In this document: in pieces, positions 3,190 to 56,770 of the stretch
Numbering within the stretch: the first letter of the stretch is position 1
Layout: every line of letters starts with the position of its first letter
DNA from: Gekko japonicus
Taxonomy: Eukaryota
DNA: 64,000 nucleotides
Assembly (NCBI RefSeq): GCF_001447785.1
Contig: NW_015164664.1
Location: 774,274-838,273, forward strand
Direction of reading: 5' to 3'
The notes under the pieces: generated by a model
The model's database searches: none
Seen by the model: only the letters and a program-made list of their open reading frames with translations
What the model was told of the DNA's origin: nothing
Made by a program: the position numbers and the translations under genes

Positions 3190-3960
3190 GAGGCCGGGCC
3201 AGGTTCACGGCTCGCGGTCCGCATCCCGCATCCCGCCAGGCCAGGGAGGAGCGAGGCGGGAAGGCTATAAAGCTCTTGGCTGGGCGCGCTCGGGACGGGA
3301 CATGGAGTCGCTGCACCGCGCCGTCGGGTTCCTGGCCGTCGCAGCCGGTAAGCAGCCCGCTCGCCTCTTGCTAACTTGTCCTCGCCTCACTCGCCAGCCG
3401 CAGGCGGAAGGGACTCGGTACCGGGACCCTGCCTGTGGTGTCCAGGGTCTGTGCTACGGACCCGGTGGGAAGCTGGGGTCCCTCCCTCGGCGCCTCCGCC
3501 TGCCGCGGAAACGAGCAGCGCCGCCGCCTGTGCGCCTGGTTTTCGCCGCGGCGCTCCTTCTGCGCTCTCCGCGCCTTTTGCAGGACTCGAGCGGCACGAC
3601 ATGGCTGCGAATCGCGATCCCGCCTGACGTCGGAGCAGTTTTTCAGCACGATATTAAACCGAGTTATAGCCTTTGTTGTTGTCCATGGCTCAGCGGGTCA
3701 AAACTTTTGTGACGATCGCCCCGTTTTTCTTTGTTCCTCATCCTGCAGCTCAGCGCAGTCCCGACTCCCGCGGCTCCTGGTTTGGCCCTTTCTCCTGCAG
3801 GTCCCCTTCGGCTTCGCGCATCTCACTTCTCACATCCCCACCCGCGCGCCCCCCCTTCACCCCCCACGCACGGCGGCTTGTTTCCTTGCACGTCTGAATA
3901 TTCGTCTTGGGTATCTGGCTGCCACGTAAAGGCCTTGAAGTTGCCAAAGATCCACTCCCC
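3190..3960 (+). promoter_or_regulatory. CpG island promoter of gene A with TATA box
   Basis: CpG-dense GC-rich block; GAGGCGGG at 3253-3260 and TATAAA at 3266-3271, 31 nt before the ATG at 3302 (GACATGG Kozak). Confidence 0.75.
3302..3347 (+). CDS. Gene A exon 1 (MESLHRAVGFLAVAA-G)
   Basis: Kozak ATG after the TATA box; G|GTAAGC donor, phase 1. Confidence 0.75.
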
Positions 3961-6900
3961 GCTTGTCCGATTAACGGCTTCAGTATGTGTCCCCTTCCTC
4001 CCTTCCAGGATCTCTCTTGCTGGCGGTCCATTTCTACAGCTCCGCCGGGCCTACTCCGCTGATCCCCAGCTCTGCTCTTGGGGTCCTTCTGCTCCTTTTA
4101 TCACTTCTTCTGGCATATGCAGGTGAGAAAATGGTAGATGTTCTCTGGAAGCTTTGGAAGGCAGACTGTGTTTTGCTCTGTATATGTTGATTGATGTTAG
4201 TGTACTTTTGCCAGTTTAACTGACCTAATGTGTAGGGAGAGGCCAGGGCTTTAGTGGAGGAGCATCTGCTTGGCATGCAGAAGGTCCCAGGTTCAGTCCC
4301 CGGCTTCTGCAGTTGAAAGGATCAGGCAGTAGGTACTGTGAAAGACCTCATCCTGAGACCCTGGAGGGCCTCTTCCGTCCAGTGTTCATGTGGACCACAG
4401 ATTTCAGCTCCCATCACAGTATCTGGAAACTTGCATACAATGCCAATGAACACGTGTGCCAGGTTACTAGTTCTCATGGCTGCAGGCACACGTTTTGTTT
4501 ACTTTGTTTATATTCCCCCTTCTCTCTAGTGGGGATGCAAAGCAGCTTACATAGGTCTCTCTCTTCTCCATTTTATTCTCACAGCAGGTCCGTGAGGTAC
4601 ATTAGATTGTGCTGTTTGCTCGAGGTCATACAGCAGGCTTCCATAACAGACTGGGGATTCAACCCCGGGTCTCCTGGTCCAGCCTTCTAACTGCTACACC
4701 ACAGTGGCTTCATCCCTGGTTCCCAAGTATGGCTTCCATGGATGGAGTTGTGTCTCTTTAATTGCTCGGGGCTGTCATTAGTTAGGTTGAGAGGCCGTTT
4801 ATAAAACCTGTGGCTAAAGATTCTGTTTATGCATTGTACTGACTTACATTTTGCAGCCCTACAAGTTTGGTAACAAAACTGTTGCTTGTCTTTTTTCAAT
4901 CCTCCGTCAACAGGGGTACGGAAGAGCCGCCAGAATGCCTCCTTGTTTGTGTCACTCTGCCTGACGGTTTCAGTGCTGTGGTGTGGCTATGGAGTGATCC
5001 AGATCCTGGCTGGGCAAGGGGTCCTCCCCGGCACTGCTGACCTGCGCAACGCAGCCGTGCCTGGACTGGTAGCCTTCAGTCTGGGGCTGCTCCTCATCAG
5101 CCTGGTGGGCTTCCTCCACAAAGAGGTCCACCTTGCCATGATGGCGTCTGCCATTTCTCTGGCCTGTGCCCATGAAATCGCAGCCGTTTATGATGCTGCC
5201 TTCGGATCGTCTGCTGTGGCCTGCAATTACATGGTTGTCTGCTTTGTTGGGGGCTACGTCGGGTTGGGGAAGTGCCTCTTTTTTCTAAGCCAAGAGAAAA
5301 TTGCCCTGCCTGGCACAGACCTGCCCAAGAAAGAGGCCAGCAACAGGCAGGGTCCAGACAGTGGCACAGGCTCAAATGACTTGACTGCATTCGGCTTGAT
5401 CCTGAACATGCTCTCGGCCAGTGTCTTGGGCTGCCGGCTCCTGGGGGTGACTGATGATCTCTTTGTGGGGCAGGTCCCCTGGCTCTGGGCAGGAGGGGTC
5501 TACCAGCTTGGCGCCTCCATCTTCTCCTATCGTTCCCTGGATGCGCTGACTGCCACTTTTTTGGGCTTCACCTCCCTCCTGAAGTTTGGGGAAGGCTATT
5601 CCCTCTTGATCCTGCGCTGGGTGCCTGAGGAGCCCAGCTTCCCCATTCCATTCTCAGTGGCTTTTGCTGTCCTCTTGACCATTTTGGCCGTTTTCATTGC
5701 TATTGACAGCCTGGCTGATGGCCTCTATCTGCTGTTCTATGTGGCCTTGTGCATCGCACTTGCCTGCAGTCCACGAGGCTTTCTGGAAGGGGGCCCTCAG
5801 GGTGTGGCAGTGGCCATTTTTGTGGCCTCCACGCTCCTGACTCTTCTTCACCTTTACAATGGGAAAGCAGAAGTTAAAATCCCGAGGGGGGAGGGAGTGC
5901 TCAAGGCTTTGCTCTCACGTCTCCAAGTTTGCAAGCTCCGGGAGGGGAATGACCTCCACACTCCCTATCTGGGTTACTCCAAATATGCCGATGCCGAAGT
6001 ACTGGGCTATGCATGCAGTGTGCTTGCTTCTTTTGCCATCACAGTGGCAGCAAAGCCAAACTCCCCTCTTGCTACAATAGTCCTACCTTGGGTGGTGGCT
6101 GCAGGGGGGCTCTTGAAGCTTCTGTGTGGTTCTCTGGCTTTCTCCCGTGGCAAGACTTTAGAAAGCAGCGCTTTCATTGTCTATGGGTTTATGTGGATTA
6201 TCTGGGGCATTGCCAGGTATGGGGGGCTGTATGGTGCTGCACGGGGGTTCCAGGTAGCTGTGGGCATTGTCTCGCTCATGCTTTTCAATGCCTTCCTCGT
6301 CCTTTGCACCCTTTTCCTGAGCATCTCCTGGTTCATCTACTCCCTCTCCTTTGAGCTCATACTCATCAGCTTCCTGTTGGATGCGGTTGGTGCCACCTCC
6401 ACTGGTTATGACATTGCTGTCACCATCATCTTTGGCTTGGTCAGCTTCTACTGCTTTCTGAGTGCCCTGGTCAACTGCACTTTTGAGAGTCCTCAGCTCC
6501 CCGTGGGACGTCCCATTGTGAGGCTCAGTGGCTTTGGGGGAGGAAGCACCAAATGTCTTCATTTGCCAGCCAGGAAAGCATCTTCAGTCAAGCAAGTTGC
6601 AGGTAAGGAAACAGTACAGCTGGTGAGGCTGTTTTCTGGGCCATAGGCAGAAACTTTGATCATCTACCTTTATTAAAGCTCCTTCAAAAAGCAGTTTGAA
6701 CACATGCCTTACACTAAGTGAGACTCTAAGTCTATCAGGGTCAGTATTGTCTACTCTGAGTGGCAGTGACATGCCAGGGTCTCAAGTTGAGGTCTTTCAC
6801 ATTATTTACTACCTGAACCTTTTAACTATGTAGTATGTCTTGAGTCCCAGAAAGGCAGATTATAAATAACATAAATAAATAGTTTAAAAAGTGGTGATAT

Positions 6901-9900
6901 TGGGGATCAAATCCAGGACCTTTTGCATGCAACACTGATGTTCTATCACTGACCCACACCTCCTCTTTCAGTTGATGCTGTACACTATTCACCAGATTGT
7001 ACAGGGAGCTCCTATCTTGTCAGCAGACTTGGCTTTTTGTTCTGATTTTGGACACTTAAATCCAGGGGTCCTTTCGTAGAAAAAGAGCTAGGGGAACTCA
7101 TTAGCATAACTCATTAGCATATGCCACACCCCCTCACATCACCGGAAGTGTGTCATAAGGCCACACCTCCTGACATCACCGGAAATGTGTCATAAGGCCA
7201 CACACCCCGCCCCCAATGGTCCCGGCTGCCGGTGCCGGCCTTGCAGCTCCACTGCCGAGCCCCATGAGGGGCCCGGCGGTGGACCTGCAAAACTGTGTTC
7301 CCCCGCATCCCCCCCCCAAATGACCTCTGGAAACTGCCTTTGGAAACCTTAAGAGTCAGTTTAAAAGTCCAAGACAAGTACTGGTGTTTTAAGAGAAGGG
7401 GTTTGACTACTGGAAAGAGTGTACCAGCCTTCAGGAAAAGGAAATGACCTCTGCTTAAATCTATTTTGCCACCTCAGACAAAACAGCCCTAAGGCAGTGT
7501 ATAAATTTAGCATATAAATGCACACAGCTGAGCTTAGTTGTCTCTTGCAAGTCCTTGCACCAACAAGCTAAGCAGGGCTTGCCTAGTTTATAATCTACCA
7601 ATGGACAGAAAGAGTCAAGGTACAGTGTCCTGCACTCCCTCATCTGTGGGTCTGTGGCCTGGCATTGTTAACCACTAAGCCCATCCTTTGGTTTCAGAGA
7701 TAATGAAGAAAGGGGGCGTGTGTGGGATCCCCACAGACACGGTATATGTTCTTGCAGCAGCCTGCTGTCAACCTGATGCTGTGGAGAAGGCTTACAAGTA
7801 AGGGGCAAGTTCTCCATCCAGGGTTCCTCTGGCGATCTAATGCTGGGGGTGGGGGAGCTGCTATGTTTCTTGGGTCTAACACAGTCATGGACAGAAACCA
7901 GTGCAACTCACCTTCCCTTAGCAACAACCAGGACACCTTTTGTAGCAGGAACTCCTTTGCATATTAGGCGACACACCCCTAATGTAGCCAATCCTCCAAG
8001 AAGAAGAGCTCTGTAAGCTCTTGGAGGATTGGCTACATTAGGGGTGTGTCGCCTAATATGCAAAGGAGTTCCTGCTACAAAAAGAGCCCTAGAACCACAC
8101 TCCTGCACAGTGTCTCTCTTAAACTCTTACTGATACTCTCCTCCATGTAGATCTCCATGTGATACTCTCCTCCATGCAGATCTCATCCCTTTGCACATGC
8201 TTGGTTCACAACTCGCATCTACATAGCTCTTCTCAATGACACTGGAGTAACCTGCCAACTTCACACATTGCTTCCCTTCCTCATTCACACGCCAATAGCC
8301 ATGACTTTGTTCTGAATCAGCAACCCAGGAAGAGGCATGGGAGATAATTCTTGGGTCCGGGAGTTGAGAGGATGGATTGTGTAGGCACGGTTACCATGAT
8401 CAAGGAATGTGTCTACTTTCAAGGCATGGCTAGGGTCTTCAATCTGAACTTGCATATTTGCTAGACTTATTGAACCTCTTTGTTCTCTCTCTCACCCTAG
8501 CACAAAGCACCAGGCTCAGGACCGTCCCATGTCGCTCTGGATTTCAAGTCTGAAACAGCTGGAACCGGCCAAGCATCTGTTCAGCCCTGTCCTCTGGGAT
8601 TTCATGGATGCTGCATGGCCATCACCTATCAGCTTGGTGATTCCAAGGGGTTAGAGAATCTCTTCTTTGCTGCTCAGACTTCTCCTCTTTAACCCTTCCC
8701 TGTTTTTTGGATTCCACTTCTCTGTGTGGTGCTCCTGTAAAGGGCCATTGGTCTCAAGAATCTCTTCTGAATGGGAGAGCTTTGATGCTGAGCAGCTCTT
8801 TTGTTTTTTCCAATGTAGGTGAATGGGTGGATTACCTGGGCATGAAAGACTCTGCTAAATATGTTGGTACCCCTCAGAGCGTAGCTATTCGCATTCCAGA
8901 TTGCTCGGTCACTACCCATCTGATTGACTTGGTGAGCTAATCTAGAACCTCTGCCTTTATGTGTCTCTGCCTTTAGGGTTGTGAAAGAGCATGGAGAACT
9001 TTGGTGAGCAGTCCAGGGATACACTCTACCACTCACCTCTTAAATGATAGGCTTAAAATAAAATATAGGTGAAATCTGTGGGGTTTGTATATCTGAGCCC
9101 TGCTTTGATAGCTTGTTCTGTACCAGGCTTTTCAGTTTTAGAGGGGTCTGAGACCTTGGTTGGTCAAGACAGAGGATGGAAGGAGAAGACAAGTACTACA
9201 TCAGTGTCCAAAGGACAGTAGGGGTTTATGTCAAATCAGGGAAACTGATGGGAGGTAGTTAAGGAAAGTCTGGTTGCCTAGGGTCAGAAACTGCTTGTTT
9301 GTTTTAAAAAATGTCCCCTCATAAGGGCAGGAAACCTTTTTTTTAAAAAAGCATGTCATCTTTATTTAATATGAATTCCTTGACAGGTGCAGTCCATAGG
9401 GAATTGCCTCATTCTAGGATTTGCTCTAATATGGGAGGAAAAGCCACCCCCTGTAAATCTAACCCTATGCATGCAGTTCTCCTTGATCTTATGAACAGCC
9501 TTATGCTCTCTTTCTCGGTCTTCAGGTTGGCCCAATTACTGTCACATCTGCCAATCCGACAGGAGAAGCAGACACCACTCACCACAACCAGGTGTATGCC
9601 AAGCTAGGAGACAAGGTAAACTCTATGCAAGTGGTATCAAACATGTGGCCCGGGGGCCAGACCAGGCCCTCGGAGGGCTGCAATCCGGCCCGTAAGGCCC
9701 TGGCTGTTTCCTGCTTCCTTTCCCAGTTCTGCTGCTGTTGTTACATTACAGCTTACTTTACCAGACTCTCTCAATCACACAGGAGAGGTAGATAGGCAAG
9801 CATCTCCTGTTCTATTGAGAGAGGCTGGTAAAGCACTGGCTGAGGCTCCTCCCCCTCCTCCTCCCAGGGGGAGGGAGGGAACCCAGAGCTCGCTTTCAGG

Positions 9901-12900
9901 CCAGTCTGCCTCAATCATATTCAGGACACAAAGGGAAGCCTTTCTTTTCTTCCACTGGCTGAGGCTCCTTCCTGAAGGGAGGCAGGCAGGATGTTGTTGC
10001 CCATCTTCAAGAGGTCGGCTGATGGAGAATTTAAACCGGTACACCGGCTCGAACGGCTGCTGGAGAGTTGCTCGGCAATTGCCTTCTTCGCGGGAGGAGA
10101 TCAAAGCCTGTTTCCGCTTCTTCCGAAGCGGAATCACGCCAACCTAACACTCCCTCTTAGGCGCTGCTGCCTGCTTGTCCCCCCCCCTCGCTGGGGAGCG
10201 ATGCGCTGGGCTAGAAACTGCCCAAACTGTCAAAAGCAGCCGTCGCCCACTTCGCACAAAAGTGAAAGTGCGTCAGTCCTCCATCTTGGCTCGACCGGAA
10301 GCCCTGGCATTACATTTTATGACACACATGGCCCGGCCCAACAACGTCTCATTTATGTCAGATCTGGCCCTCATAACAAATGAGTTCGACACCCCTGCTG
10401 TATGCAATTGCTTGTCCTCATGGCAGACCCAGCTCCCATGATTTTAAAGGGAGCTTCTTAAACCTTTAGGTTACCAGAGCTTGAGCTCAGTGCACCTCTA
10501 CTGAGTGGAACTTTGTGGGTTCAAACATCTAGAGCAAGAGTCCCCAGTGTGATGCCCATGGGTACCAACACCTCTCCTGGTGCCTGCCGAGTGTCTTTCG
10601 AAAGTGGAAGGGGCCAAATGGGGCTTTGCCCTGCAGGGTTTCTGGGTGGCCATCGGAAATCTGACTGGCTCTGCAGATTTTTCTAAAATGTTGCTTTGGC
10701 AGCAGCTGCCACCACATCACAAGGATCTTAAGCACTGTGTTCATTTTAAAAGATATCCTGTTAAACAGAACTTTTGCCCGAAGCGCTGAAGAGTTATACA
10801 TAACCTCGCTCTATGACTCTGCCTCCTGTGGCAGCCATTTAGTGGCTGCAACTACCACCCTGTGTCAGACTTCCAAAGGTGCCTGCAGGTTCAAATAAGT
10901 TGAGGACCCTTGTTCTAGAAAGACCCAAAACTTAAGTGCTTCTGATTTGCTCAGGATCGTGAGCTGCTATTACAGAGAGATGCATTCACTACAGCTGTGA
11001 AGGGGTGGGGGGAGGCAAACAACTGAGCCTCTTCAGTTACCTATCCTCTTTCCCCCCAGGAAAGAAGAGCAAGACCCAAGTTAAACTGGAGAAGAGAGAG
11101 GGCACCCCCCTGCCCTCCACTCTCCATTTGTCATATGAAAGAAAAAGGCAGGAAGGATGCTGTTTTCCATCTAGCTCAGAAGTGTGTCCATGACATTGGA
11201 AAGCACTAAGGCAGGATGTACGTCTTGTATAAATTACCAGACCAAATCTGGAGAGAGCTTCCTCTCTTCACTCAAAAAATGTCTGATCCTTTCTAGGTGG
11301 ATGCGGTTCTTTGTGATGGACCTTCTCCAGAGAACATAGCCTCCACAGTGGTGGACTGCACCAAGATTGGGAGTGGGCACATTGGGTTCTTTAGAGTTGG
11401 CCTTGTCCCTAAATCCCAGGTCAGCATTATCTCATTGTTCCTTCTCTTGTACAATAATTTTTGATGTGTTAAGTCAGTCACATTGTTTATTAGAAGCCAT
11501 GTATCATTGCAAGCACAGCACTATACGTACACAAAGTCTGCAACCCCCAATAGACCTGATTAAATATAGACAGACAGATAGATAGATAGCTATAGATATA
11601 GATATAGAACTTCTATACAACAGGTAGTACAATTGGGGGCCTTTGGGCATATATACAAAAATGTAAATATATTGGCACTCCAAAATATCTACCATCCAGG
11701 GCCACAAAGGATGTTATCTTTCTTTTAATAAATTGTTATCCCACCTTCTTCAAGGCAGCTTAGAGCAGGGGTGTCAAACCTACGGCCCGCAGGCCAGAAG
11801 CAGCCTGCCCAGGGTTTTAATTTGGCCTGCGAGTGGGGCTCTCTTCTCTCCCCCCTCCACTGCCCATACTCACCCTTCTGAGCTGGAGCTGCCTCTGAAT
11901 GCAGGGAGCAGAGGATGGGGCTGCCAAACTTACCAGTTCGCTCAGCCATTGAGTGCGTTCCTCTCTGCCTCCCAGCCACCACTCCCAGCCTCCATCAACC
12001 TCATCAAAGGTAGGGGACCTGGGGTGTCTTTCTGCTGTGATCCTTGGGCTTCTTCTTGTTTTTTTATTTTAAAAATTGCATTGCCAAATCCCACTATTCC
12101 CCACCTTTCCATTTTAGGCAGGCATCTTTTAAGGGTGGGAGGGAGCGTTTGGGACCAACCACAGTTAAAATATAGAATTCTACAAACTCAAGGAGCTCCA
12201 GTTTTGCAGAGAAATATTAGCTTTAACATCACGATCCCTCCTAATATGGGGCTCCAATGGCATATCTCTGCTGCCTGGCATTATATTTTATGACACACAT
12301 GGCCTGGCCTGACAAAACCCCATTTATGTCTGATTGACCCTCATAACAAACAAGTTCAACACCCCTGGCTTACAGGCTGTACACATTTTTTCCATTTTGT
12401 TCTCACAACGACCTGTGAGGTAGGTTAGGCTGAGAGAGAAAGCGATGGGCCCAAGGTCACCCAGGTGGCTTCAGTGGGAGTTTGAGCCCAGGGCTCAGGC
12501 TGACACATTAAGGACTACACCACACTGGCTCTCTGGAAGAACAATCTCATAAATGCTTTCCTTGAAGCCACGCACGTATAATCTCTTGATATTAACTTTG
12601 CTGAGAAGAGTCCCTCTTGCTAACACAACATCCCTGCAAGCCACAAGTATTCTGGAAGATCTCCATTTCTGACAGAGATTACCCAAAATCAAATGGGTGC
12701 ACTCAAAAATCTAGAGGGCTTGCCCTCTGCACTTGGCAGCTCACAGTGCAATAGTATTGCTTTGCCCAGCTCCTAGAAATCAATGCATTTTATAGAGCAT
12801 CAACTGTGCTGGTGACTTTTGCAGTTGGAGTCTGAATGTAACCCTGTGTAGTCTGTCTTCTAACTGCAAGAAAGTCAGCCTGTGTATGCAAAATACCTAG

Positions 12901-13454
12901 GGTTGCTAATCTCAAGGTGGTGGCTGGAGATTTCTCACTCTTACAACTGATCTCCAGGTAACAGAGATCAGTTCGCCTGTAGAAAACTGTGGCTTTGGAA
13001 GGTGGACTCAATGGCATTATACCCCATTGAAGTCCTTCCCCTCCCCAAATCCCACCCTCCTCAGGCTCCACCCCCAAATCTCCAGGTATTTCCCAATGCA
13101 GAGCTGGCAACCCTAATAATAGCAGCAGCTGTGCCTTGAGACCAGGAACTCTTGAATACTGCCACGACTTCATTCAGAGGAGACTAAACTAGGAGGAGAA
13201 GGCTACAGACCCATGGAACACTCATCCAGTCTTGCATTCTTTGTCTCCATTCTCAGGTGTTACAGATTCTGGAGCGGGTCCAAAGAAGATACCAACCAGG
13301 CCACACCAATAATGCCCTGGTCATGGAGGGCAAGGAAGAGCAGCAGACCCTGTGCAGAGCCTTCCTCAGCAATGATGCTCATGTTCAGGGAAACTCACCA
13401 ACATCATATACCAACAAAGCATTCTGTACTGATGAAGGAGGTGCCCCTCAGTGA
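3302..13454 (+). CDS. Gene A: 873-aa multi-pass membrane protein, 3x GPR1/FUN34/YaaH (SatP)-like repeats plus C-terminal Sua5/YrdC-like domain (9 coding exons)
   Basis: Manually spliced exons 3302-3347, 4009-4122, 4914-6602, 7698-7797, 8501-8649, 8819-8931, 9526-9615, 11297-11419, 13257-13454. All introns are GT-AG and phase-compatible; total 2622 nt with no internal stop seen. YrdC motifs: GVCGIPTDTVY, AIRIP, TSANPTG, ASTVVD. Confidence 0.88.
4009..4122 (+). CDS. Gene A exon 2
   Basis: ttcctcccttccag acceptor; SLLLAVHFYSSAGPTPLIPSSALGVLLLLLSLLLAYA; G|GTGAGA donor; phase 1-1. Confidence 0.8.
4914..6602 (+). CDS. Gene A exon 3 (bulk of the membrane domain)
   Basis: Lies within the 586-aa ORF 4886-6646; acceptor cag at 4911-4913, donor G|GTAAGG; highly hydrophobic, with SatP-like repeats. 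Confidence 0.93.
7063..7329 (+). mobile_element. Non-autonomous hAT-like MITE (CAGGGGTC...GACCTCTG family) in gene A intron 3
   Basis: Imperfect TIRs; near-identical inverted copy at 34031-34476; partial copies near 23627 and 38526. Confidence 0.7.
7698..7797 (+). CDS. Gene A exon 4 (start of YrdC domain)
   Basis: tttcag|AG: EIMKKGGVCGIPTDTVYVLAAACCQPDAVEKAY; AA|GTAAGG donor. Confidence 0.92.
7929..8090. repeat. Palindromic MITE (perfect ~64-bp arms) in gene A intron 4
   Basis: 7938-8001 is the reverse complement of 8019-8082, separated by a 17-nt loop. Confidence 0.85.
8501..8649 (+). CDS. Gene A exon 5
   Basis: ccctag|C: TKHQAQDRPMSLWISSLKQLEPAKHLFSPVLWDFMDAAWPSPISLVIPR-G; donor GTTAGA. 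Confidence 0.88.
8819..8931 (+). CDS. Gene A exon 6
   Basis: tgtag|GT: EWVDYLGMKDSAKYVGTPQSVAIRIPDCSVTTHLIDL; donor GTGAGC. Confidence 0.9.
9526..9615 (+). CDS. Gene A exon 7
   Basis: ttcag|: VGPITVTSANPTGEADTTHHNQVYAKLGDK; donor GTAAAC. Confidence 0.92.
9628..10397 (+). mobile_element. hAT-type non-autonomous element
   Basis: Degenerate left TIR, right TIR gttcgacacccctg; 3' part shared with 12270-12367. Confidence 0.65.
11297..11419 (+). CDS. Gene A exon 8
   Basis: ttctag|: VDAVLCDGPSPENIASTVVDCTKIGSGHIGFFRVGLVPKSQ; donor GTCAGC. Confidence 0.9.
11766..12367 (+). mobile_element. hAT-type non-autonomous element (CAGGGGTGTCAAAC TIR)
   Basis: TIR caggggtgtcaaac / gttcaacacccctg; 8-bp TSD gcttagag/gcttacag; related copy at 9628-10397. 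Confidence 0.75.
12899..13114. mobile_element. MITE with AGGGTTGC/GCAACCCT termini; family copies at ~27512-27720, 33309-33520, 57240-57449, 63696-63895
   Basis: Terminal inverted repeats and a shared core (acaactgatctccag...ctggagaaaatggctg...ggagggtggact). Confidence 0.7.
13257..13454 (+). CDS. Gene A exon 9 (terminal coding exon)
   Basis: ttctcag|: VLQILERVQRRYQPGHTNNAL...YTNKAFCTDEGGAPQ*; its start aligns with the gene B tail VMQIFEKVK. Confidence 0.85.
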   Translation: MLQILERVQRRYQPGHTNNALVMEGKEEQQTLCRAFLSNDAHVQGNSPTSYTNKAFCTDEGGAPQ

Positions 13455-15870: not shown

Positions 15871-16105
15871 NNNNNNNNNNNNNNNNNNNNNNNNNNNNNN
15901 NNNNNNNNNNNNNNNNNNNNNNNNNNNNNNNNNNNNNNNNNNNNNNNNNNNNNNNNNNNNNNNNNNNNNNNNNNNNNNNNNNNNNNNNNNNNNNNNNNNN
16001 NNNNNNNNNNNNNNNNNNNNNNNNNNNNNNNNNNNNNNNNNNNNNNNNNNNNNNNNNNNNNNNNNNNNNNNNNNNNNNNNNNNNNNNNNNNNNNNNNNNN
16101 NNNNN
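15871..16105. other. Assembly gap (N run)
   Basis: 235 N. Confidence 0.99.
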
Positions 16106-16270
16106 GTATAGTGGTTAAGTGAGCAGACTCTAATATGGGAGAACCGGGTCTGATTCCCCACTCCTCCACTTGCAGCTGCTGGATGACCTTGGGCAAGCCA
16201 TAGTTCTGGCACAGCTGTCCTTGAAAGGGCAGTTCTTGAAAGAGCTCTCTCAGCCTCACCCACCTCACAG

Positions 16271-16477
16271 GCAATGTTCCCCCTAAGCTGTGGAGTCTTG
16301 CAAGCAAAAATTCTACTCTGTGAGCTACTGGCATTAAAGTTGTGAGCGAGTGATTTGGCTGCTGCATAAATTAGTTTGCTCTGGAGCCATCCTTCCTGAG
16401 CTAAGACAAAAATGTGTGAGCTGGAGGCTAAAAAACTGTGAGCTAGCTCACACTAACTCATCTTAGAGGGAACACTG
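16271..16477. mobile_element. MITE with GTTCCCYCTAAG TIR nested in a SINE-like repeat; inverted copy at 40383-40590
   Basis: gcaatgttccccctaag ... cttagagggaacactgc; the sequence matches 40383-40590 in reverse. Confidence 0.7.
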
Positions 16478-16572
16478 CTCACAGGGTGTCTGTGGTGGGG
16501 AGGGGAAGGGAAAGGAGTTGTAAGCTGCTCTGAGACGCCTTTGGGTAGTGAAGGGCGGGGTATAAAGCCAAT

Positions 16573-16742
16573 NNNNNNNNNNNNNNNNNNNNNNNNNNNN
16601 NNNNNNNNNNNNNNNNNNNNNNNNNNNNNNNNNNNNNNNNNNNNNNNNNNNNNNNNNNNNNNNNNNNNNNNNNNNNNNNNNNNNNNNNNNNNNNNNNNNN
16701 NNNNNNNNNNNNNNNNNNNNNNNNNNNNNNNNNNNNNNNNNN
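16573..16742. other. Assembly gap (N run)
   Basis: 170 N. Confidence 0.99.
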
Positions 16743-18989: not shown

Positions 18990-20490
<1,501 letters not shown>

Positions 20491-21004
20491 TTATAGCATC
20501 CTAATTTGGATTTTCTGAGATATACAGTTTTTGTAATATTTCATAAATTCTTGGATTATCTGGGAAGAGTCAGCTGTCATGAAGTTGTCTCACCTTCTGA
20601 TGGCACTAATCATTTCTCTGTTTAGGATTGCCCTGGAAATCTCTCCATTGTATAAAACATATATTTATATATTTTCTGTGCTTGTGTAGCTTTCAGCTTC
20701 TGACTCTCTGTCTTTGAGAGTGTTTATAGATTGATCTAACTTATGCTGAACATATTTGTTTTCATGACATTCCCTTTTAATTTCTTCTTTTTGATTATGT
20801 ATAAAGTTTGCAATACTCTCCTTATATAGACTTCCCTTGGTTCTCAGACAGTATTGTCAGAAAACTAGATATCAGCCCTTTCTTCCATGAATATATATAA
20901 TTTAAAAGTAATTCAAAGAAGAGGGGGGACCCTGCACCAACAGGCTGAAGTATATTATACCTAGATTTTCTACAACACATGATTGACGTAAACATGAATA
21001 ACCC

Positions 21005-23030: not shown

Positions 23031-23709
23031 AAGTGTTTGTTCTGAAGAAATGGATTAGGAATATCAAACAAGACCCCCTTAGACATGTTTCACTGTGTTC
23101 AGGAGAGAAATAGCCTTTTATTGTTGCTTTTATGTACTGAATTATTTTTGTGTCTTTGTAAGTATTTTAGCTCTTGTTTTAATTGTTTTAATAATGTGGG
23201 TTGGTTTTTGTTTTTAATAATTTTATTATATATGTTTTAATTTGTTAACCACCTTAATGGCCCTTGTGAGGGTAGAAAGCCATGATATAAATGTTGTAAA
23301 ATAAATAAATAAATACATACATACAAATTAGTAGCCTGCCATGTAGAAAGAGGCAACTGAAGGAAGTTATACTAAAACTGGGTGCCAGGTAAATTACAGC
23401 AAATTACAGAACATTAGATAAAGCAGTGAAAACTCTCAAAGATGGGAACTGTTATAATTTTTAGCCTGAATGAACAATACCTTAAATAATTTTTTAATTT
23501 AATTATAAAAAACAGACATAAACATCAAATGCATACCCCACTCCCCATATAGAAAAACAACCTACAGTATATACATAACAACAACAAAAAAGAGAGAAAG
23601 AGGGGGGAAAGGAAAAGTGAAAAACAAGCAGAGGTCATTTCGGGGGGATCGTGGGGGATCGCAGTTCCCCCGGGTGAGGTACGGGGGGCGGGGCACATGA
23701 CGAAGCCCC

Positions 23710-23861
23710 NNNNNNNNNNNNNNNNNNNNNNNNNNNNNNNNNNNNNNNNNNNNNNNNNNNNNNNNNNNNNNNNNNNNNNNNNNNNNNNNNNNNNNNNNNN
23801 NNNNNNNNNNNNNNNNNNNNNNNNNNNNNNNNNNNNNNNNNNNNNNNNNNNNNNNNNNNNN
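23710..23861. other. Assembly gap (N run)
   Basis: 152 N within a GC-rich MITE. Confidence 0.99.
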
Positions 23862-33999: not shown

Positions 34000-34030
34000 G
34001 TGAGAGGAATGGATAAGGAATGGAGAAACC

Positions 34031-49784: not shown

Positions 49785-49870
49785 TCATACTATTTGGTTC
49801 TTCACCTTCTCAAATATCTGCATCACCTTGGCTGCTGGGACACATCCTTCTCTCAGTATCGTGATACTAC
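49785..49870 (-). CDS. Gene B exon 10 (terminal coding exon)
   Basis: ctcctag|GT: SITILREGCVPAAKVMQIFEKVKNQIV*. Confidence 0.9.
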
Positions 49871-52800
49871 CTAGGAGAGAAGAAAAGGCAGATGAATGCT
49901 CGATCCCGGAGGAAAAGCAAAGGAATGTGGGAAAAAGTCATCCTGGCTGCCTCACCTTACTGTACAAAAGGGCATTATTATATGAGCTTAAATGAGCAGT
50001 CCTTCCTTTAGCAGCCACCCATCATTCAAACTTGCCAGTTTTCCAAGCTGAGTTTGCATCTTAAACATGTAGCCTAACTTCTGCCCAACACAGTGTTCAA
50101 GATAGAGGTACCCCTACTAGGTCAGTCTCTAATGAAAAATTCAGGTAAATATAGGCAAGACTTGGGAGCTGGGGTTTAAAAGACTGAGAGCAGGCAAACT
50201 GCAGAGCAGATATAGAAATGCTGTTTGACTAAAACAGTACCCTGAACACTAGGACATAAATCTGGTGCTCACCTTCGTCTATCTTGGTGCAGTTAACCAC
50301 TGTGGATGCCACCACTTCATTGGACTGCCCGTCACAGAGAACTCCATCCAGCCAGTGTCCAAGGCGCCTGAGGGCGAAAAGGAGAGTAAATGCCACTGGG
50401 TCACTTAAAAACATATGCCCCATTTCACTGGTGTGGCTTGGCATGCCTCCAAGCTCCCTTTGCTTGGGCATAAAGGCTATTTTATAACATTGACTGAGCA
50501 GGAGCACTCACAAGATGACCATGTCATGGTGGGTGCTGTCAGTTTCTCCGCTGGGATTAGCCGAGGTGATTGCCAGGGGACCTGTCATGTCTATGAGATG
50601 GACAGTGACTGTTTGGTCAGGGACTCTGATCATGATGCTGTCTTTTGTTCCCACTCGGTCATATCCATCTCCAACCCCTGGAAGAAAAGAAATGGGACAG
50701 CAGTGGTTCCAAAGCATCTGGTTACCCACACTGCTGTCATTGTTTCATATTTTGGAGATATTATCTATTTGTACCCATAACTCTCAGCACACAGTACATT
50801 AGAATGATGCTCAAGATATTTCCATAGGATTTATCCATTCAGACCTTGTCCAGGACTAGGCATGCTTAGCATCAGAAATGGAATGGAACATGATAGGATC
50901 CAAACACCTTCCTGAGATTAAAATTCCATGGATTGTTGTTAAATGTATTGAAAGGAAAAATGACAATCTTGCCCAAAAGATGGGGGACAGAGTAACTTCA
51001 TGAGGCTGACCCATGACTTTGGCAGAACTTTGTATTTTTTGATCATTCAGATATTTGGAGGGGTTAGGAAAAGGGCAGCAAAAACATCTGCAAGATGGTT
51101 TTGACTCCTGGCCTTCTTTCAAAATAGTGAAATGAGAAAAGATTTTGCTGAAAGCAACACAATGTTATTATGTCTTTGTTGTTTTGAACAACTCCCAACA
51201 CACTATATTCAAGGGAAAAAGGTTTCCCTGTGGACTGTGTCTCTAAGTGGCAGCAGGAGCTGACGTCTCACCTCCTCATCATACTGCTGAATGAGGGAGA
51301 AAATGATGTGGAATTTCCAAAAGAAATAGTGAAGACCAACTAGGATGACAGACACTTTCTGAAAAGCTGAACCAGATTTTAAGAGATGTTCATTCACACT
51401 TTGAAGTTAATGAACAGAACCTGCTCTGGATGTGCTTTAACCATCCATGGGTTTCCCAAGTTGTCTTGACAATTTAGCCTTCATTTCTGGCATTTTCCCC
51501 ACCCTTCCTCCTGAGCTCCTTGTGGCCTTGACAGTCTCCCCATTTTATGATAACTCTGCAAGGTAGGTTAAGCTGAGTGATGATGACTGGTCCCAGGTCA
51601 GCCAGTGAGCATGTCTTGAGGCACCTCTGGCATCGCAAAACAAGAGATGGAATAAGTGACGGGATGCCCAGCCAACCCACCTAACGTCTTCAGCCACTCT
51701 CCTTTCTTGACAATGCATCCAATACCTCCAGGGTAAACATTCTCCATAAATTCCCAGAGCAAAGGGCTGAAGGGTGGAGTGGCAGCCCGGAGCTGGTCTA
51801 CGTTGGAGATGAAGATACAGATGGGTTTCTCTTGAGGCCTGTCCTGTGAGGACGAGAGGCAACAGGTAATCCTGGGAATGGATAGGCAAGGTGAAATAAG
51901 CACCACTGAAAGGGCTCTACTCTGCTGCTCTGGTCCAGCCCAAACATCCTGGCTACTCCTGTGTCATCTGAGGTCTTGTTTTGGAGATGACTGAGCTGCC
52001 AGCACTGAATACTCAACCCACCAGGAATGTATTTATTTCATGTACCCTCTCCCACTCATGGTGCTCTGGACTTGGCACTCGGGGGATAAACTAAAGAGAG
52101 GATCTTTGTTAACTACCTGTGTTTAGGATTCCTGACTAGGAAACCTCTACCTTATTTTCCCCGTAGCCAGGAATGTCTTTAATAGAGGATAGTCAAGGGT
52201 AAATAAACATGGGGCTGAACTGCAGTGGCCGGATCTGGGTGGTTTTCAGTTTCTCCAAAGTCTGGAGAAGATCTCAACTGGATCAGCTATTTATAAGGGG
52301 AGGGGCTCAGATGTCTACAAAGTACTTTTGGATCCTATTCTGTTTTCCAGATTATTTCCATTTATCACAAATGTCTCCTTAATTGCTGAGGTTCTGCTCT
52401 GAAAGGTGTTTGGTATATGCAGAAGACGCCATAGAACTGGAAGCTGATGGACTTCTGTTGCACTTGGCAGAGCTTCAGGGATAACGGAAGGGAGACCAGC
52501 CCTCTGGTTTCCCAGTATATATTTGGAAACTCCATAGCAACTAATACAAAAACACAGAACTGCTGTTAAAATCCTGATCTTTCCATACCTGCACTTTAAA
52601 AATAAGTTTCTAGTCCACAGGGATGTTTGATAATGTTATGGGAACAAATACGGGTACAGTTGTGGAAATGGGGATCCAAATTCATTCAGGTTTCCTACTT
52701 CATATAATGTTAACATATGCATATATAATAAATAAAATAAATGTGTAGCTGGACACACAGTGTCCTGTGGCTTGCTGTTGTTGTGTTCATCGTGCATACC

Positions 52801-55800
52801 TTGATTTTGTAGATCTTCTCAATGGCTTCTGGGTGTTTGCATGAGGCAGCTAGAGCATAAACCGTGTCAGTGGGAACTCCACACACCCCTCCTGCATTCA
52901 ACTTTTCAGCAATGGTCCTCAGGCCACTGGTCCGATGGGAACTGGGGCTGATGCAAGGAGGAGAGGAAGGTGCTTCCTTTACAGCTGTCTCTGCCTGAAA
53001 ATGATTGAGCAAACAGGATTTATAGAACTAAAGGAGCACCCCAAGGAGCCATGACTCATGCCTACTAGGCAGGAAAACAGTAGCAGGCAGGGCCTGGACA
53101 GGGTCAATTTGGTCACTCTTGCAAGTTTCAAAATAGAAATCATCCCAGCTGATCTAACTGAAATGCAGAGTTCTAGGGGGACATCTCTTACCCTGAGGAG
53201 GGAGGGTCCCATCAGGATGAGCTCTCTGCCAAATATGCCATTTGCAAGAGATGCTGTCGCTCCATAGATGCAGAGAATGCTGAAGATGATCAACATAACA
53301 ACTGTAGAAAAAAGGACACATGTCAGTGTCTTGTCTCATGGGCCTCTTGGCATTTCTTGTTGCTAGCAAGCATCAGGACTTACTCTCAAGAGGCACCGGA
53401 AGGCTTTCCAGTGTGAAGAGAAGGAAGCAAACAATCAGCACCTCCATCACAGCTGTCAAACATAGGAGCACCAGGTTCGAGTAGGAGGCTGTGGGCAAAA
53501 GAGGAAGAGATATACTTAGTGTTACTGTGGGAGGGCCATAGGCAGGTATGAACTGATGAGTGAATGAGGTTCTCCCTCATTCCCTAGAATGCTCAGTGTG
53601 TTGGCAGGCTTTGATTTTCACAAGAACTGAACATGTGAGTAGGGGAGCTAACAAGGGGAGCTGTGCAAGACAACTCTATGTGTCTTGGCTGCTGGCTAGA
53701 GAACTGGCCTTGAAGCTTTCCCTTTGAGCATGTGCAAGAGCCACAGCAACTGGCTTTCACCCAATGAGCCACAACTCTGCTGGCAGGAGATCAACAATCC
53801 CATATTGTACTTTGGCTTACCTAAAATCATCAGAAACACATTGACAACCAAAAAGGCTACAGCTCCTGCTGTGAATCCCCCATCATTCCTTGGGTCAATG
53901 TTCAGTAAATTGCCTACAAAAAACCCAGCAAAAGAGCTTGTTGGAGCAAAGCAGACCAAGGACAAGGTCAAAGGAAGTGGACAATGTATTGTGTTGTGCT
54001 GCCTTTTAGCAGGGAACTCAGAACAGCTTGTGCAGAGTGGATTTCCTTTGGAGGAGGAAGGACTGGGTACAAGTGGTGGCTTTAAAATATTTGGTTTCCA
54101 AATTGGTTGGATGGGGTATTATGAAAGTACAGAAGCAAGCAGACTGGAAGGCTGTGCTAGTCCCAAAGCATAATCAGATCTGCAAGACCACTTCTCAAAT
54201 GAGAAGCATCCTAGCAGTTCTGCAAGCCACATCCAGACTCTGAAGAAGACTTTCAGGTCTCATAATGGCTGCACACACTCCCCCCCCCCTGCCATCAGAG
54301 CAGGTTCCAGTTTGCTTTTCAGCCCTCCTCCCATGCAGACATGTGTGACTCATATTCCACAAGTTAAAGGTTTCCATACCTCAGTGGTAAAGCCACAAGC
54401 AACCTGTAGCAATAGGACAGAATGCCTGCACTAAATCATCACCCAGGAACATGCCCTATTAGTATCTAATACAAGGACTCTATAACATGATTTTGCCTAT
54501 AGGGCCTCCTGCACTGGACTTTCTTTGGTCATCTGTTGCACCCATCCAGAGGGACAGTTGGGGAACCAACACAGCTTGCGTGTTTGGCACTGTCCCAGGT
54601 AGGTGGTTGACAAGGGATCATCCCACACAGCATATTTTCATTGTGGCCAGCACAGTCAAGAAGAATACAAAGTCAATAGGAAAGAGGGTTATTACCTGCA
54701 AACAGGAGCCAGGTCCAGGTTGCCCAAACAGCTGCATAGCAGAATGGCAAGACTGACCCAAATCTTCTCCCCCTCTGCACTTGCATTCTGCACACGTAAA
54801 GCTGGAATATGGCTCCTGGGATCAACACTGTGGGAATGCTGAGGTGCTGCCTGATGGGGTCTTTCAGAGACCCTTGGAGGGCAGAGAAGGCAGCCAGGCC
54901 ATTGCAGATGAAAAACAAGGCATTAGGAGCATCCGAGGGGGTCAGGTTGGGGGATTTGTTCGACTTTGATAGGCAGCTTTTGATGCTCATCAATGCTTTC
55001 TGGAGCTTTGAACTGGACATAACTTGAACCCCTATGGGAATCAAAGCCTTCTCAGCAACTGAGTTTACCAGGCTGGCAAAAGTGGTGTAGAGAGAGGTGG
55101 CTGTGTAGATACTGCAGGCAACCCCCCAAAATATATAGGCCCCTCTGATTGGAATCTGCTGAATGGTGGAAACTGTCAGAAGGACAAAGAGAGAATTGTG
55201 CACCACCTCGAGAACATCCCTGTTGAAGGACATCAAGAGGATGACACAGGCAGTGGCCAAGAAGAACCAGCCACCGACCATCCCTGCCCGGCTCAGCTGC
55301 ACATTCTTAGATTGGATGAAAACCGTCAGTGTGAACTCTTCCCAGGACATTACCAGCCAGAAAAGGCTGTGGACACCTGACTTGGTGGTATAATAGACAT
55401 CACCTCGCAAGTAGCCATAATAACTGGACAAAACATGGCCGATAGAGTTGATGCTCACCCACACAGTTCCTACATAGAAGTTACACATGTAACCAAAACA
55501 GTAGAAAGAAAAGATAAAGGAACTAATGAAGTCACACAGATTGCCCAGGGCCATGGGCTCAGCATACTTGGTGTTCTTCTTCTCTTCCCTGACATTCTTG
55601 GAAGAACTGCGGCTGGCTGACCCAAGCAAAAGGACATTGAAGAGAGGGTTCCCAAAGCCTGGCAGAATATATCGTTGAGTGATGCCCTTGAAAAGGAGTG
55701 CTATTGCACCATACAACCCACAGATGACAATGGCCAATTCCAAGACTCCTGAGACCACCAGAGCCCACTGGGCAAAGAGTCCGACTGCTTCAAACACCAA

Positions 55801-56770
55801 AGTCAAAGTGATGGCTCCAAAGACGAAGGGCATTATGTAGTTCACAGTTGCAGAACAGAAGGACAGGATGAAAGAAATGAAAATATAGGCCACCAAGCCT
55901 GCTACAGCACCATCCCTGGTGGAGAAACAGGCAGGGTCGAGTGAGGGGAGGGCAGAGACATTGCTGGGACTGAGGGATACATTCCCTGGCAAGAAATATG
56001 CCTCGGAAACAATGCGCGTGGCCCCGTAACTGCCCCATAGGCCAGCAAAAGCCAGGAAAGCTGTGCCACCCAAGTGGTCATACTTCCGGAAGGTCAACAA
56101 GCCAGCTAAGAGTTGAGACAGGCCTCCAATCAGGATGAGGTGAACTCCTAGGGGACCAAACAGAGTTAACCAGCAATGAGAATGGTTGTTAAAAGAGCTG
56201 AGCAACTCAAGGTTAAGACACTTTTGTTTCTGTGCAAATTCTGTGTTATAACTGGGGCATGCAAGGCGCTTCCTCTGGACTTTTAATCAAGCATTTAACA
56301 TAGATGTTGTGAGAGCTGAAAATGTATATTCTAGAAAATAAAGAGAAGATCCTTGTCTCAAAAAGACTTGAACTTTCTAAACAATTTCCCCAGTGTCCAA
56401 AGCTAGTGAGATCATCCCTCTATTTCCTGGTCCGCCCTTATTTATGTCAATGACAAGGGAGCCATTTTGCACAAGAGAGGTTGGGGTAGCGCCAGGTGAA
56501 GGACCCCTGCATCTGAATACAGCACCCACAGCAGAATGATGCTAGTGTTCATTGCTCTGCAGATGCACGGCTTAATTGGTAGAGGTGAAGGGTGAGGCTG
56601 GCTCTCTACTCACCGGCTAAGATGTTTTCCACCCCCTCAGGTTGGATGTTGCTTTGAGCAGAGGAGAAATTCTGCAGGCACACAAGGAATGCACTGATGA
56701 CATTCGCCAGAAGGCCCAGGACAGAGGGCTCGCTATAGAAGACAGCTGCAAAGCCTTCGGTGCTTGCCAT
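49785..56770 (-). CDS. Gene B: 873-aa multi-pass membrane protein, 3x GPR1/FUN34/YaaH (SatP)-like repeats plus C-terminal Sua5/YrdC (threonylcarbamoyl-AMP synthase-like) domain (10 coding exons)
   Basis: Exons 56770-56614, 56147-54696, 53913-53821, 53488-53384, 53301-53192, 52994-52800, 51843-51681, 50677-50512, 50367-50273, 49870-49785. All GT-AG and phase-compatible; total 2622 nt. GGLSQLLAGLLTFRKYDHLGGTAFLAFAGLW resembles SatP [31 protein letters not shown]. YrdC motifs: PTDTVYAL, KxRPxxKP, IRVP, TSANPSG, STVV, LREG. Confidence 0.9.
50273..50367 (-). CDS. Gene B exon 9
   Basis: RLGHWLDGVLCDGQSNEVVASTVVNCTKIDE-G; GTGAGC donor. Confidence 0.92.
50512..50677 (-). CDS. Gene B exon 8
   Basis: VGDGYDRVGTKDSIMIRVPDQTVTVHLIDMTGPLAITSANPSGETDSTHHDMVI; GTGAGT donor. 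Confidence 0.92.
51681..51843 (-). CDS. Gene B exon 7
   Basis: DRPQEKPICIFISNVDQLRAATPPFSPLLWEFMENVYPGGIGCIVKKGEWLKTL-G; GTGGGT donor. Confidence 0.92.
52800..52994 (-). CDS. Gene B exon 6 (start of YrdC domain)
   Basis: AETAVKEAPSSPPCISPSSHRTSGLRTIAEKLNAGGVCGVPTDTVYALAASCKHPEAIEKIYKIK; GTATGC donor. Confidence 0.92.
53192..53301 (-). CDS. Gene B exon 5
   Basis: ttctacag|TT: VMLIIFSILCIYGATASLANGIFGRELILMGPSLLR; GTAAGA donor. Confidence 0.9.
53384..53488 (-). CDS. Gene B exon 4
   Basis: cccacag|CC: SYSNLVLLCLTAVMEVLIVCFLLFTLESLPVPLE; GTAAGT donor. Confidence 0.88.
53821..53913 (-). CDS. Gene B exon 3
   Basis: ttttgtag|GC: NLLNIDPRNDGGFTAGAVAFLVVNVFLMIL; GTAAGC donor. Confidence 0.88.
54696..56147 (-). 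CDS. Gene B exon 2 (membrane repeats)
   Basis: Lies within the 510-aa ORF 54673-56205; ccctag acceptor, G|GTAATA donor; phase 1-1. Confidence 0.93.
56614..56770 (-). CDS. Gene B exon 1
   Basis: ACCATGG; MASTEGFAAVFYSEPSVLGLLANVISAFLVCLQNF...ENILA-G|GTGAGT. Confidence 0.88.

What the first reader, a model, noticed from the sequence alone, without database searches (positions are those of the whole stretch)
3302..56770. Three SatP-like repeats per chain: A+B could rebuild the hexameric SatP ring as a heterodimer
Seen: each protein shows three copies of the AceTr pattern. The TM1 motif resembling ANPAPLGL appears in B as YSEPSVLGL, YAEPMALGN and SDAPNALFF, and in A as HRAVGFL, NDLTAFGL and YADAEVLGY. 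The GG..Q/K motif appears in B as GGLSQLLAG and PGAIFQL, and in A as GGVYQLGAS and GGLLKLLCG. A terminal LPIG-like motif appears in B as ILPGFG, LIPIG and LILMG, and in A as IALPG, KIPRG and QLPVG. Known: bacterial SatP is a hexamer of 6-TM protomers, each with its own pore. Inference: 3+3 repeats equal one hexamer, either as an A/B heterodimer or as homodimers, with divergent pores that may differ in selectivity.
Basis: partly seen in the sequence, partly recalled or inferred. Interest (0 to 1): 0.85.

Follow-up and report, generated by a model that had tools for sequence, protein, structure and literature searches.

The report
Triplicated acetate-channel genes, already published

Summary
Gene A (+, 3302-13454) and gene B (-, 56770-49785) are intact, convergent paralogues. 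Each encodes about 600 residues of membrane domain followed by a Sua5/YrdC domain.

AlphaFold2 models of gecko A and of a bird B orthologue each show 18 membrane helices in three groups of six. Repeat 1 of each model superposes on SatP crystal structures (Z about 20, rmsd 2.6-2.9 A, about 180 of 182 residues). Family profiles of the three repeats align end to end (E 1.5e-5 to 1.8e-8), while reversed controls do not. The three assembly gaps lie between the genes and interrupt neither.

Ghasemi et al. (bioRxiv May 2025; iScience 2026, PMC13316224) already describe two vertebrate Ato clades, the triplicated Gpr1/Fun34/YaaH domain, the YrdC fusion and a "dimerization hypothesis" for a six-domain ring.

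Supporting it, but only circumstantially:
- the two genes are linked or neighbouring from fish to gecko;
- their zebrafish orthologues co-vary in expression;
- fungal Ato paralogues form hetero-oligomers.

The single complex prediction gave no answer. The scan holds another note on this same stretch (s1-827994); none on other DNA was found.

The parts
3302..3347 (+). Gene A exon 1 (start codon; first part of TM1 of repeat 1); phase-1 donor GT at 3348
   Evidence: Sequence read; exact match to P0001 residues 1-16
4009..4122 (+). Gene A exon 2 (rest of TM1 and TM2 of repeat 1); boundaries within one codon
   Evidence: Exact match to P0001 residues 17-54
4914..6602 (+). Gene A exon 3: TM3-TM6 of repeat 1, all of repeat 2 (about 5354-5947) and all of repeat 3 (about 5948-6601)
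   Evidence: 100% match to P0001 residues 55-616. Repeat 3 alone matches Pfam PF01184 at E 8.6e-5.
7695..13454 (+). Gene A exons 4-9 (about 7695-7797, 8500-8651, 8819-8934, 9527-9620, 11298-11422, 13258-13454 including the stop): Sua5/YciO/YrdC domain and C-terminal tail
   Evidence: Exact matches to P0001 residues 617-873; Pfam PF01300 E 1.1e-33; Sua5/TsaC2 structures Z about 10
56614..56770 (-). Gene B exon 1 (start codon at 56770; TM1 with the best-kept NPAPLGL-like signature, and the start of TM2); phase-1 donor
   Evidence: Sequence read; tblastn to B orthologues residues 1-53, 68-89% identity
54696..56147 (-). Gene B exon 2: rest of repeat 1 (about 56145-55576), all of repeat 2 (about 55575-54952), and TM1-TM3 of repeat 3
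   Evidence: Orthologues are 60-75% identical. The repeat 1 part matches Pfam PF01184 at E 6.7e-6, 26.3 bits
53190..53913 (-). Boundaries are approximate
   Evidence: tblastn matches and flanking splice signals
49785..53000 (-). Gene B exons 6-10 (about 52940-52800, 51843-51686, 50677-50512, 50368-50268, 49870-49785 including the stop): Sua5/YciO/YrdC domain with an intact K-x-R motif. Boundaries are approximate
   Evidence: tblastn to B orthologues, 50-90% identity; translations
15871..23861 (.). Intergenic stretch holding the three assembly gaps (15871-16105, 16573-16742, 23710-23861); not part of either gene
   Evidence: Runs of N located by script. There are no A or B exon matches between 13454 and 49785

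Best explanation
The window holds the two members of the vertebrate 'Ato' (AceTr/SatP-like) family, arranged tail to tail.

What each protein is: one chain with three diverged 6-helix Gpr1/Fun34/YaaH (SatP-fold) channel domains in tandem. That makes 18 membrane helices, with cytoplasmic linkers, followed by a cytoplasmic Sua5/YciO/YrdC domain. A is the orthologue of zebrafish si:ch211-153b23.4 and B of si:ch211-153b23.3.

Shown here: gene structure, intactness, the triplication, the SatP fold of repeat 1 in both clades, the homology of all three repeats, the YrdC domain, and strong conservation from sharks to birds.

Inferred: each repeat keeps a pore of its own for a small carboxylate or related anion. 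One chain is half of a SatP-like ring, so two chains complete a six-domain ring with the two YrdC domains underneath. I put the ring at about 0.55. Given a ring, I put homodimers and the A/B heterodimer at roughly 60:40.

The YrdC domain most likely binds or adenylates a small carboxylated ligand, or senses a nucleotide. This would couple passage through the channel to metabolism or gating. This last step is speculation.
For: Identity and orthology:
- Exon 3 of A is 100% identical to P0001, and orthologues run from 60 to 92% identity from sturgeon to geckos.
- B orthologues are 48-75% identical from sharks to birds.

Triplication and fold:
- Both models show 3x6 helices.
- SatP chains align at Z 20.0-20.8, rmsd 2.6-2.9 A, 176-180 residues, far above the next unrelated rows.
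- Repeat-to-repeat profile matches have clean reversed controls.
- A and B align colinearly over 545 columns at 99.2% probability, and one-repeat-shifted alternative alignments also appear.
- SatP is the only PDB sequence hit for single repeats.

Published agreement: PMC13316224, section 14.

Ring idea:
- SatP crystallises with six chains per entry and is described as a homohexamer.
- An even helix number keeps all three repeats in the same orientation.
Against: - Only repeat 1 of each model was matched to SatP by structure. The tool shows one alignment per chain, so repeats 2 and 3 rest on profile homology and helix topology.
- Pfam sees one repeat per chain, and for A that match is below the gathering score (22.7 against 25 bits).
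- The NPAPLGL signature is degenerate in all six repeats, and no transport function has been shown for any vertebrate member.
- No model coordinates were available, so the angle between repeats (half ring or closed trimer) could not be measured.
- The complex prediction gave no answer.
Confidence: 0.8

Rival explanations
1. Obligate A/B heterodimer. One A chain and one B chain form the six-domain ring, giving six non-equivalent pores and one YrdC domain with the canonical K-x-R motif (B) beside one that has lost the arginine (A).
For: - Conserved linkage. The A and B clades carry consecutive zebrafish clone names (.4 and .3). The perch locus tags are G00121340 and G00121360. In gar, Bagarius, Mastacembelus, Leuresthes and Odontesthes both genes lie on contigs of identical length. 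In the gecko they are tail to tail.
- Co-variation. The zebrafish .3 and .4 log2 fold-change rows correlate at r = 0.79 over 18 contrasts. Both appear with irg1l, noxo1a and .5 in stress or infection modules.
- Both clades are old. Sharks have each, and both clades are reported in every major lineage.
- Fungal Ato paralogues interact or depend on each other.
- YrdC asymmetry. A has K-x-Q, with Q in 95% of A orthologues, where B has K-x-R.
Against: - There is no direct test. The complex prediction gave no answer.
- Linkage and co-regulation are what tandem duplicates show anyway.
- The expression table is a pre-selected list of changed genes.
- A alone has lineage-specific extra copies: Pleurodeles, Melanotaenia, Arapaima and Trachinotus.
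- SatP itself is a homo-oligomer.
Confidence: 0.2
2. Two separate homodimeric rings. A-A and B-B each form their own six-domain ring, and the paralogues differ in substrate, tissue or regulation.
For: - SatP is a homohexamer.
- A and B share only about 24% identity across the membrane part, which suits diverged functions.
- Copy number of A varies independently of B.
- The published hypothesis speaks only of two interacting protomers.
Against: Not tested here. Conserved linkage and co-variation fit a shared role at least as well.
Confidence: 0.35
3. No ring. The chain works as a monomer with three independent pores or sensor modules, or the three repeats close into a pseudo-trimer, with oligomerisation (if any) driven by the YrdC domain.
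For: - Each AceTr protomer has its own pore, so a ring is not needed for conduction (family knowledge).
- The pTM values of 0.64 and 0.75 show a defined single-chain arrangement.
- The complex prediction gave no support for association, though this is not evidence against it.
Against: Fusing exactly three protomers, half of the ancestral six, is most simply explained by keeping the ancestral interfaces. Every solved relative found here has six chains per entry.
Confidence: 0.25

Closest known systems
Vertebrate Ato proteins (Ghasemi et al., iScience 2026;29:116467, PMC13316224; bioRxiv 10.1101/2025.05.26.656167)
   Same: This is the same family. The proteins are about 900 residues long, fall into two vertebrate clades, and have three tandem Gpr1/Fun34/YaaH domains with a C-terminal Sua5/YciO/YrdC fusion. 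AlphaFold models superpose on SatP, and two chains are proposed to form a six-domain ring.
   Different: - The paper does not discuss A/B heteromers, gene linkage or co-expression.
- It says mammals lack the family, whereas a platypus A-type protein exists (P0102).
- It shows no per-repeat motif conservation for reptiles.
Bacterial SatP / AceTr channels (PDB 5ZUG, 5YS3, 5YS8; Pfam PF01184; TCDB 2.A.96)
   Same: The six-helix fold is shared (Z about 20, rmsd 2.6-2.9 A, about 180 of 182 residues). The motifs are colinear: the TM1 signature, the TM2 GG..Q and the terminal LPxG.
   Different: - SatP is a single domain of about 190 residues that forms homohexamers.
- Here three diverged domains share one chain with an enzyme-like domain.
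- The NPAPLGL signature is degenerate, and the position aligned with the constriction residue F17 is a serine in A repeat 3.
- Sequence identity to SatP is 10-22%.
Helicobacter pylori urea channel UreI (PDB 6NSJ)
   Same: A six-helix protomer of a hexameric ring, and the second-best structural match to A repeat 1 (Z 15.0, rmsd 2.9 A, 159 residues).
   Different: The score is lower and there is no sequence signal. UreI conducts urea and has no tandem fusion.
Tandem-domain channels such as K2P and two-pore channels (from established knowledge, not tested here)
   Same: The same architectural logic applies: several ancestral protomers fused in one chain, so that fewer chains rebuild the ancestral ring and the subunits can diverge.
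   Different: These are unrelated folds. Their repeats line one shared central pore, whereas each AceTr repeat has its own pore.
Sua5/TsaC/YrdC threonylcarbamoyl-AMP synthases (Pfam PF01300; PDB 9DSV, 6F89, 1HRU)
   Same: The C-terminal domain matches at E 1.1e-33 (A) and 2.9e-18 (bird B orthologue), and at Z about 10 to Sua5/TsaC2 structures. The S-x-N motif is invariant.
   Different: - The domain is tethered to a membrane channel.
- It scores below the NCBIfam equivalog cut-offs (108.8 against 123.2 bits).
- The A clade has Q in place of the K-x-R arginine.

Membership tests
AceTr / Gpr1-Fun34-YaaH (Pfam PF01184) | Match to the family HMM at or above the curated gathering score (25 bits) | tested here: inconclusive
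   - B repeat 1 alone scores 26.3 bits, E 6.7e-6.
- The B orthologues P0127 and P0140 score 28.2 and 27.1 bits.
- A repeat 3 alone scores 22.7 bits, E 8.6e-5, and whole P0001 scores 17.6 bits, both below the cut-off.
- Repeats A1, A2, B2 and B3 give no HMMER hit.
AceTr / Gpr1-Fun34-YaaH (Pfam PF01184) | Six-transmembrane-helix protomer fold superposable on SatP | tested here: met
   - A repeat 1: 5ys8_B, Z 20.4, rmsd 2.6 A, 179 of 181 residues.
- B-orthologue repeat 1: 5ys3_B, Z 20.8, rmsd 2.9 A, 180 of 182 residues.
- Repeats 2 and 3 have the same six-helix pattern and profile homology to repeat 1, but were not superposed separately.
AceTr / Gpr1-Fun34-YaaH (Pfam PF01184) | NPAPLGL(M/S) signature in TM1 | tested here: not met
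   All six repeats carry only a degenerate form. The closest is B repeat 1 (E-P at 95-100% and the L-G invariant). A repeat 1 has no proline at all. Each variant is nonetheless conserved among orthologues.
AceTr / Gpr1-Fun34-YaaH (Pfam PF01184) | Hexameric ring assembly | not testable with these tools
The partial job gave no answer, and model coordinates are not exposed.
AceTr / Gpr1-Fun34-YaaH (Pfam PF01184) | Transport or conduction of acetate, succinate or other small carboxylates | not testable with these tools
   This needs uptake or electrophysiology assays. No functional paper on a vertebrate member was found.
Vertebrate Ato family (PMC13316224) | About 900 residues, three tandem Gpr1/Fun34/YaaH domains plus a C-terminal Sua5/YciO/YrdC domain, in one of two vertebrate clades | tested here: met
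   - A is 873 aa with 3x6 helices and PF01300.
- B is recovered exon by exon with the same layout.
- The two clades are separated by the searches.
Sua5/YciO/YrdC (Pfam PF01300) | HMM match above the gathering score, and the K-x-R ... S-x-N tetrad | tested here: inconclusive
   The HMM criterion is met for A (116.6 bits) and for B orthologues (66-110 bits). S-x-N is invariant in A orthologues and is present in the gecko B exon. K-x-R is present in B but is K-x-Q in 95% of A orthologues.

The most novel reading that the evidence does not exclude
A and B are obligate partners. One A chain and one B chain form a pseudo-hexameric ring of six non-equivalent pores, with an active (B) and a degenerate (A) YrdC domain beneath it. 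The two genes have been kept linked and co-regulated since early jawed vertebrates. In zebrafish they are co-induced with the itaconate-synthase-like gene irg1l, which hints at a role in dicarboxylate handling in infected epithelia.
Probability: 0.2. Interest if true: 0.6.

Novelty: already known. Interest (0 to 1): 0.27.

Why it matters
If the ring idea holds, these proteins would be the first animal members of a microbial carboxylate-channel family, and a case where six ancestral protomers were condensed into two chains that can then diverge pore by pore. All of that is already in the literature as a hypothesis.

- an independent check on a reptile locus;
- statistical support for all three repeats at the sequence level;
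- evidence that the two clade genes are linked from fish to gecko and co-vary in zebrafish;
- a platypus member, which qualifies the published "not in mammals".

The function remains unknown. Open points are the substrate, the oligomer, and the role of the YrdC domain. Therian mammals, people included, appear to lack the family (my reading; I did not search for therian members).

Tried and rejected
- **Complex prediction.** I sent the sea-turtle A membrane part (P0010 residues 57-638) with B repeats 1-2 (P0135 residues 8-425), exactly 1,000 residues. The result was "no answer" (score 0.12, mark 0.34), the alignments were not used and the controls were not run. It counts neither for nor against binding. 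I have no gecko RNA evidence for gene B, its splice junctions or A/B co-expression.\n- **First exon model of A.** My first model joined exon 1 directly to the large exon. It was wrong: a 38-residue exon lies between them.\n- **Clade-specific thirds.** hhalign on these left A repeats 1 and 2 without a significant match. Pooling both clades and the full-length colinear alignment resolved this.\n- **Foldseek on the whole model.** This gave only weak E-values (best 2.6e-3; SatP 0.027-0.045). B was searched exon by exon by reference, and full-length orthologues stood in for it. No N stretch was filled.

Full report
**What is in the window**

The window is reptile DNA. The large + strand exon is 100% identical to Gekko japonicus LOC107108494, and the scan's other notes call the genome a gecko.

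Gene A runs on the + strand from the ATG at 3302 to a stop at 13452-13454, in nine exons. An exact-match walk of P0001 along the window gives 3302-3347, about 4009-4122, 4914-6602, and then six small exons.

Gene B runs on the - strand from the ATG at 56770 to a stop near 49785, in about ten exons.

The two genes converge, 3' end to 3' end. The three runs of N are at 15871-16105, 16573-16742 and 23710-23861. They sit in the roughly 36 kb between the genes, so neither reading frame crosses a gap. What the gaps leave uncertain is the exact A-B distance and, strictly, the scaffold join. I filled no N.

I did not build or search a joined model of B. It was searched exon by exon by reference, and full-length orthologues stood in for it.

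**The observation**

*Helix count.* A crude hydropathy scan finds 16 membrane segments in A. AlphaFold2 gives 18 helices grouped 6+6+6:
- Gecko A (P0001 with a 67-sequence alignment): pTM 0.64, low-confidence linkers at 194-207 and 392-412.
- Pigeon B orthologue P0127: pTM 0.75.

*Fold.* The VIA structural second look puts SatP crystal chains far above everything else.
- Model A: 5ys8_B, Z 20.4, rmsd 2.6 A, 179 of 181 residues, on model residues 1-189.
- Model B: 5ys3_B, Z 20.8, rmsd 2.9 A, 180 of 182 residues, on residues 8-228.
- The next fold for A is the hexameric urea channel UreI (Z 15.0).
- The tool prints one alignment per chain, so only repeat 1 is shown for each model.

*Repeats 2 and 3.* These rest on sequence profiles.
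- With A and B orthologues pooled, the three repeat profiles align end to end: R1-R2 93.9% (E 1.5e-7), R2-R3 95.4% (E 1.8e-8), R1-R3 79.7% (E 1.5e-5).
- Nine reversed-profile controls reach at best E 0.005 over 25 columns.
- A and B align colinearly over 545 columns (99.2%, E 1.2e-19). Alternative alignments shifted by exactly one repeat also appear.

*Family HMMs.* Plain HMMER sees less. Pfam PF01184 hits only A repeat 3 (22.7 bits) and B repeat 1 (26.3 bits; gathering score 25). Single repeats searched against all PDB sequences hit SatP and nothing else, weakly (E 0.079 and 1.3).

*Selection.* The signature positions are conserved within each repeat across orthologues. The glycine of the terminal (L/I)PxG is 98-100% conserved in all six repeats. 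The TM2 glutamine is 93-100% conserved in four repeats, and A repeat 3 has a conserved lysine there.

So three repeats, each under selection, are real in both proteins.

Both proteins end in a Sua5/YciO/YrdC domain:
- Pfam PF01300 at E 1.1e-33 for A and 2.9e-18 to 1.3e-31 for B orthologues.
- TIGR00057 below its equivalog cut-off.
- Sua5/TsaC2 structures at Z about 10.

The S-x-N motif is invariant. In the ungapped alignment of the K-x-R segment, B keeps the arginine, while A has glutamine in 95% of its orthologues. This agrees with another first-reader note on this window (s1-828117).

**Comparison with what is known**

[quoted passage not shown] Its section on vertebrate ATOs states:
- the family forms two vertebrate clades;
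- the proteins are about 900 residues;
- AlphaFold models show three six-helix Gpr1/Fun34/YaaH domains in tandem, fused to Sua5/YciO/YrdC;
- a fish protein superposes on SatP (TM-score 0.82);
- two protomers are hypothesised to form a six-domain ring like the SatP hexamer (Fig. 7C).

The finding is therefore already known.

The paper does not mention a heterodimer of the two vertebrate clades, synteny or platypus. It does argue for hetero-oligomers among fungal Ato paralogues.

**The one new element: A with B**

*Linkage.* A third protein search shows that fish A-type proteins are named si:ch211-153b23.4 (zebrafish LOC335392). B-type proteins are named si:ch211-153b23.3. These are consecutive gene models from one zebrafish clone.
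- In perch the locus tags are PFLUV_G00121340 (A) and G00121360 (B).
- In gar, Bagarius, Mastacembelus, Leuresthes and Odontesthes both genes lie on contigs of identical length.
- The gecko arrangement therefore reflects an old linkage.

*Co-variation.* In a zebrafish toxicology table, the log2 fold-change rows of .3 and .4 correlate at r = 0.79 over 18 contrasts. The table is a pre-selected gene list.
- .4 and .5 are induced by Shigella infection together with irg1l, noxo1a and mmp9.
- .3 and .5 are hubs of one module with irg1l and noxo1a.

*Weight of this evidence.* These facts fit partnership, but they are also what tandem duplicates show. It used the turtle A membrane part with B repeats 1-2.

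**How it most likely works**

*Shown:* two intact, conserved genes, each encoding three SatP-fold domains plus a YrdC domain.

*Inferred from family knowledge:*
- Each six-helix domain has its own pore.
- The even helix number keeps all repeats in the same orientation and puts the linkers and the YrdC domain in the cytoplasm.
- Three is half of the ancestral six, so two chains probably close a ring. My odds are about 0.55.
- The partner may be self or the paralogue. My odds for the A/B pairing overall are about 0.2.

*Speculative:* the YrdC domain adenylates or senses a small carboxylated ligand and so couples passage to metabolism or gating. The paper offers a similar thought.

**Verdict**

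- Observation: confirmed.
- Interpretation: partly supported, and its core is already in print.
- Heterodimer: open.
- Interest: low to moderate.

Noticed in passing
window 8500-8530 (gene A exon 5); gene B exon 7 near 51843: In the YrdC K-x-R motif, A has K-x-Q, with Q in 95% of 103 A orthologues, while B keeps K-x-R. S-x-N is intact in both. This matches note s1-828117 and suggests that the A-clade YrdC domain is catalytically altered.
   Followed up: partly
P0102 (Ornithorhynchus anatinus LOC100084527), orthologue of gene A: Platypus has an A-type protein of 878 aa, 61% identical to the gecko exon, with PF01300 and weak AceTr matches. The published statement that the family is absent from mammals therefore needs the qualifier 'therian'.
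   Followed up: partly
window 49785-56770 (gene B): The search with B's large exon returned no identical protein; the best hit was a turtle protein at 75% identity. The gecko B gene therefore seems unannotated, or annotated at a very different length, although all its exons look intact.
   Followed up: partly
zebrafish orthologues si:ch211-153b23.3, .4 and .5 (papers PMC6980646, PMC11140123, PMC8877790): The zebrafish orthologues are co-induced with irg1l (itaconate-synthase-like), noxo1a and mmp9 in infection and stress data sets. This hints at an epithelial, inflammation-linked role, possibly in dicarboxylate handling. The identity of the third neighbour (.5) was not established.
   Followed up: partly
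window 13455-49784: The 36-kb stretch between the two genes holds three assembly gaps, and its nine ORFs of 153-337 aa have no Pfam match. It has lower GC (0.34-0.44) around 16-24 kb. No gene was recognised there.
   Followed up: partly
   Followed up: no
hit tables: Several species carry two A-type genes on contigs of the same length (Pleurodeles, Melanotaenia with consecutive LOC numbers, Trachinotus), and Arapaima carries two on different contigs. The A clade therefore duplicates on its own.
   Followed up: no
P0001 model residues 5-179: After SatP, the best structural match is the Helicobacter urea channel UreI (Z 15.0), another six-helix protomer of a hexameric ring.
   Followed up: no
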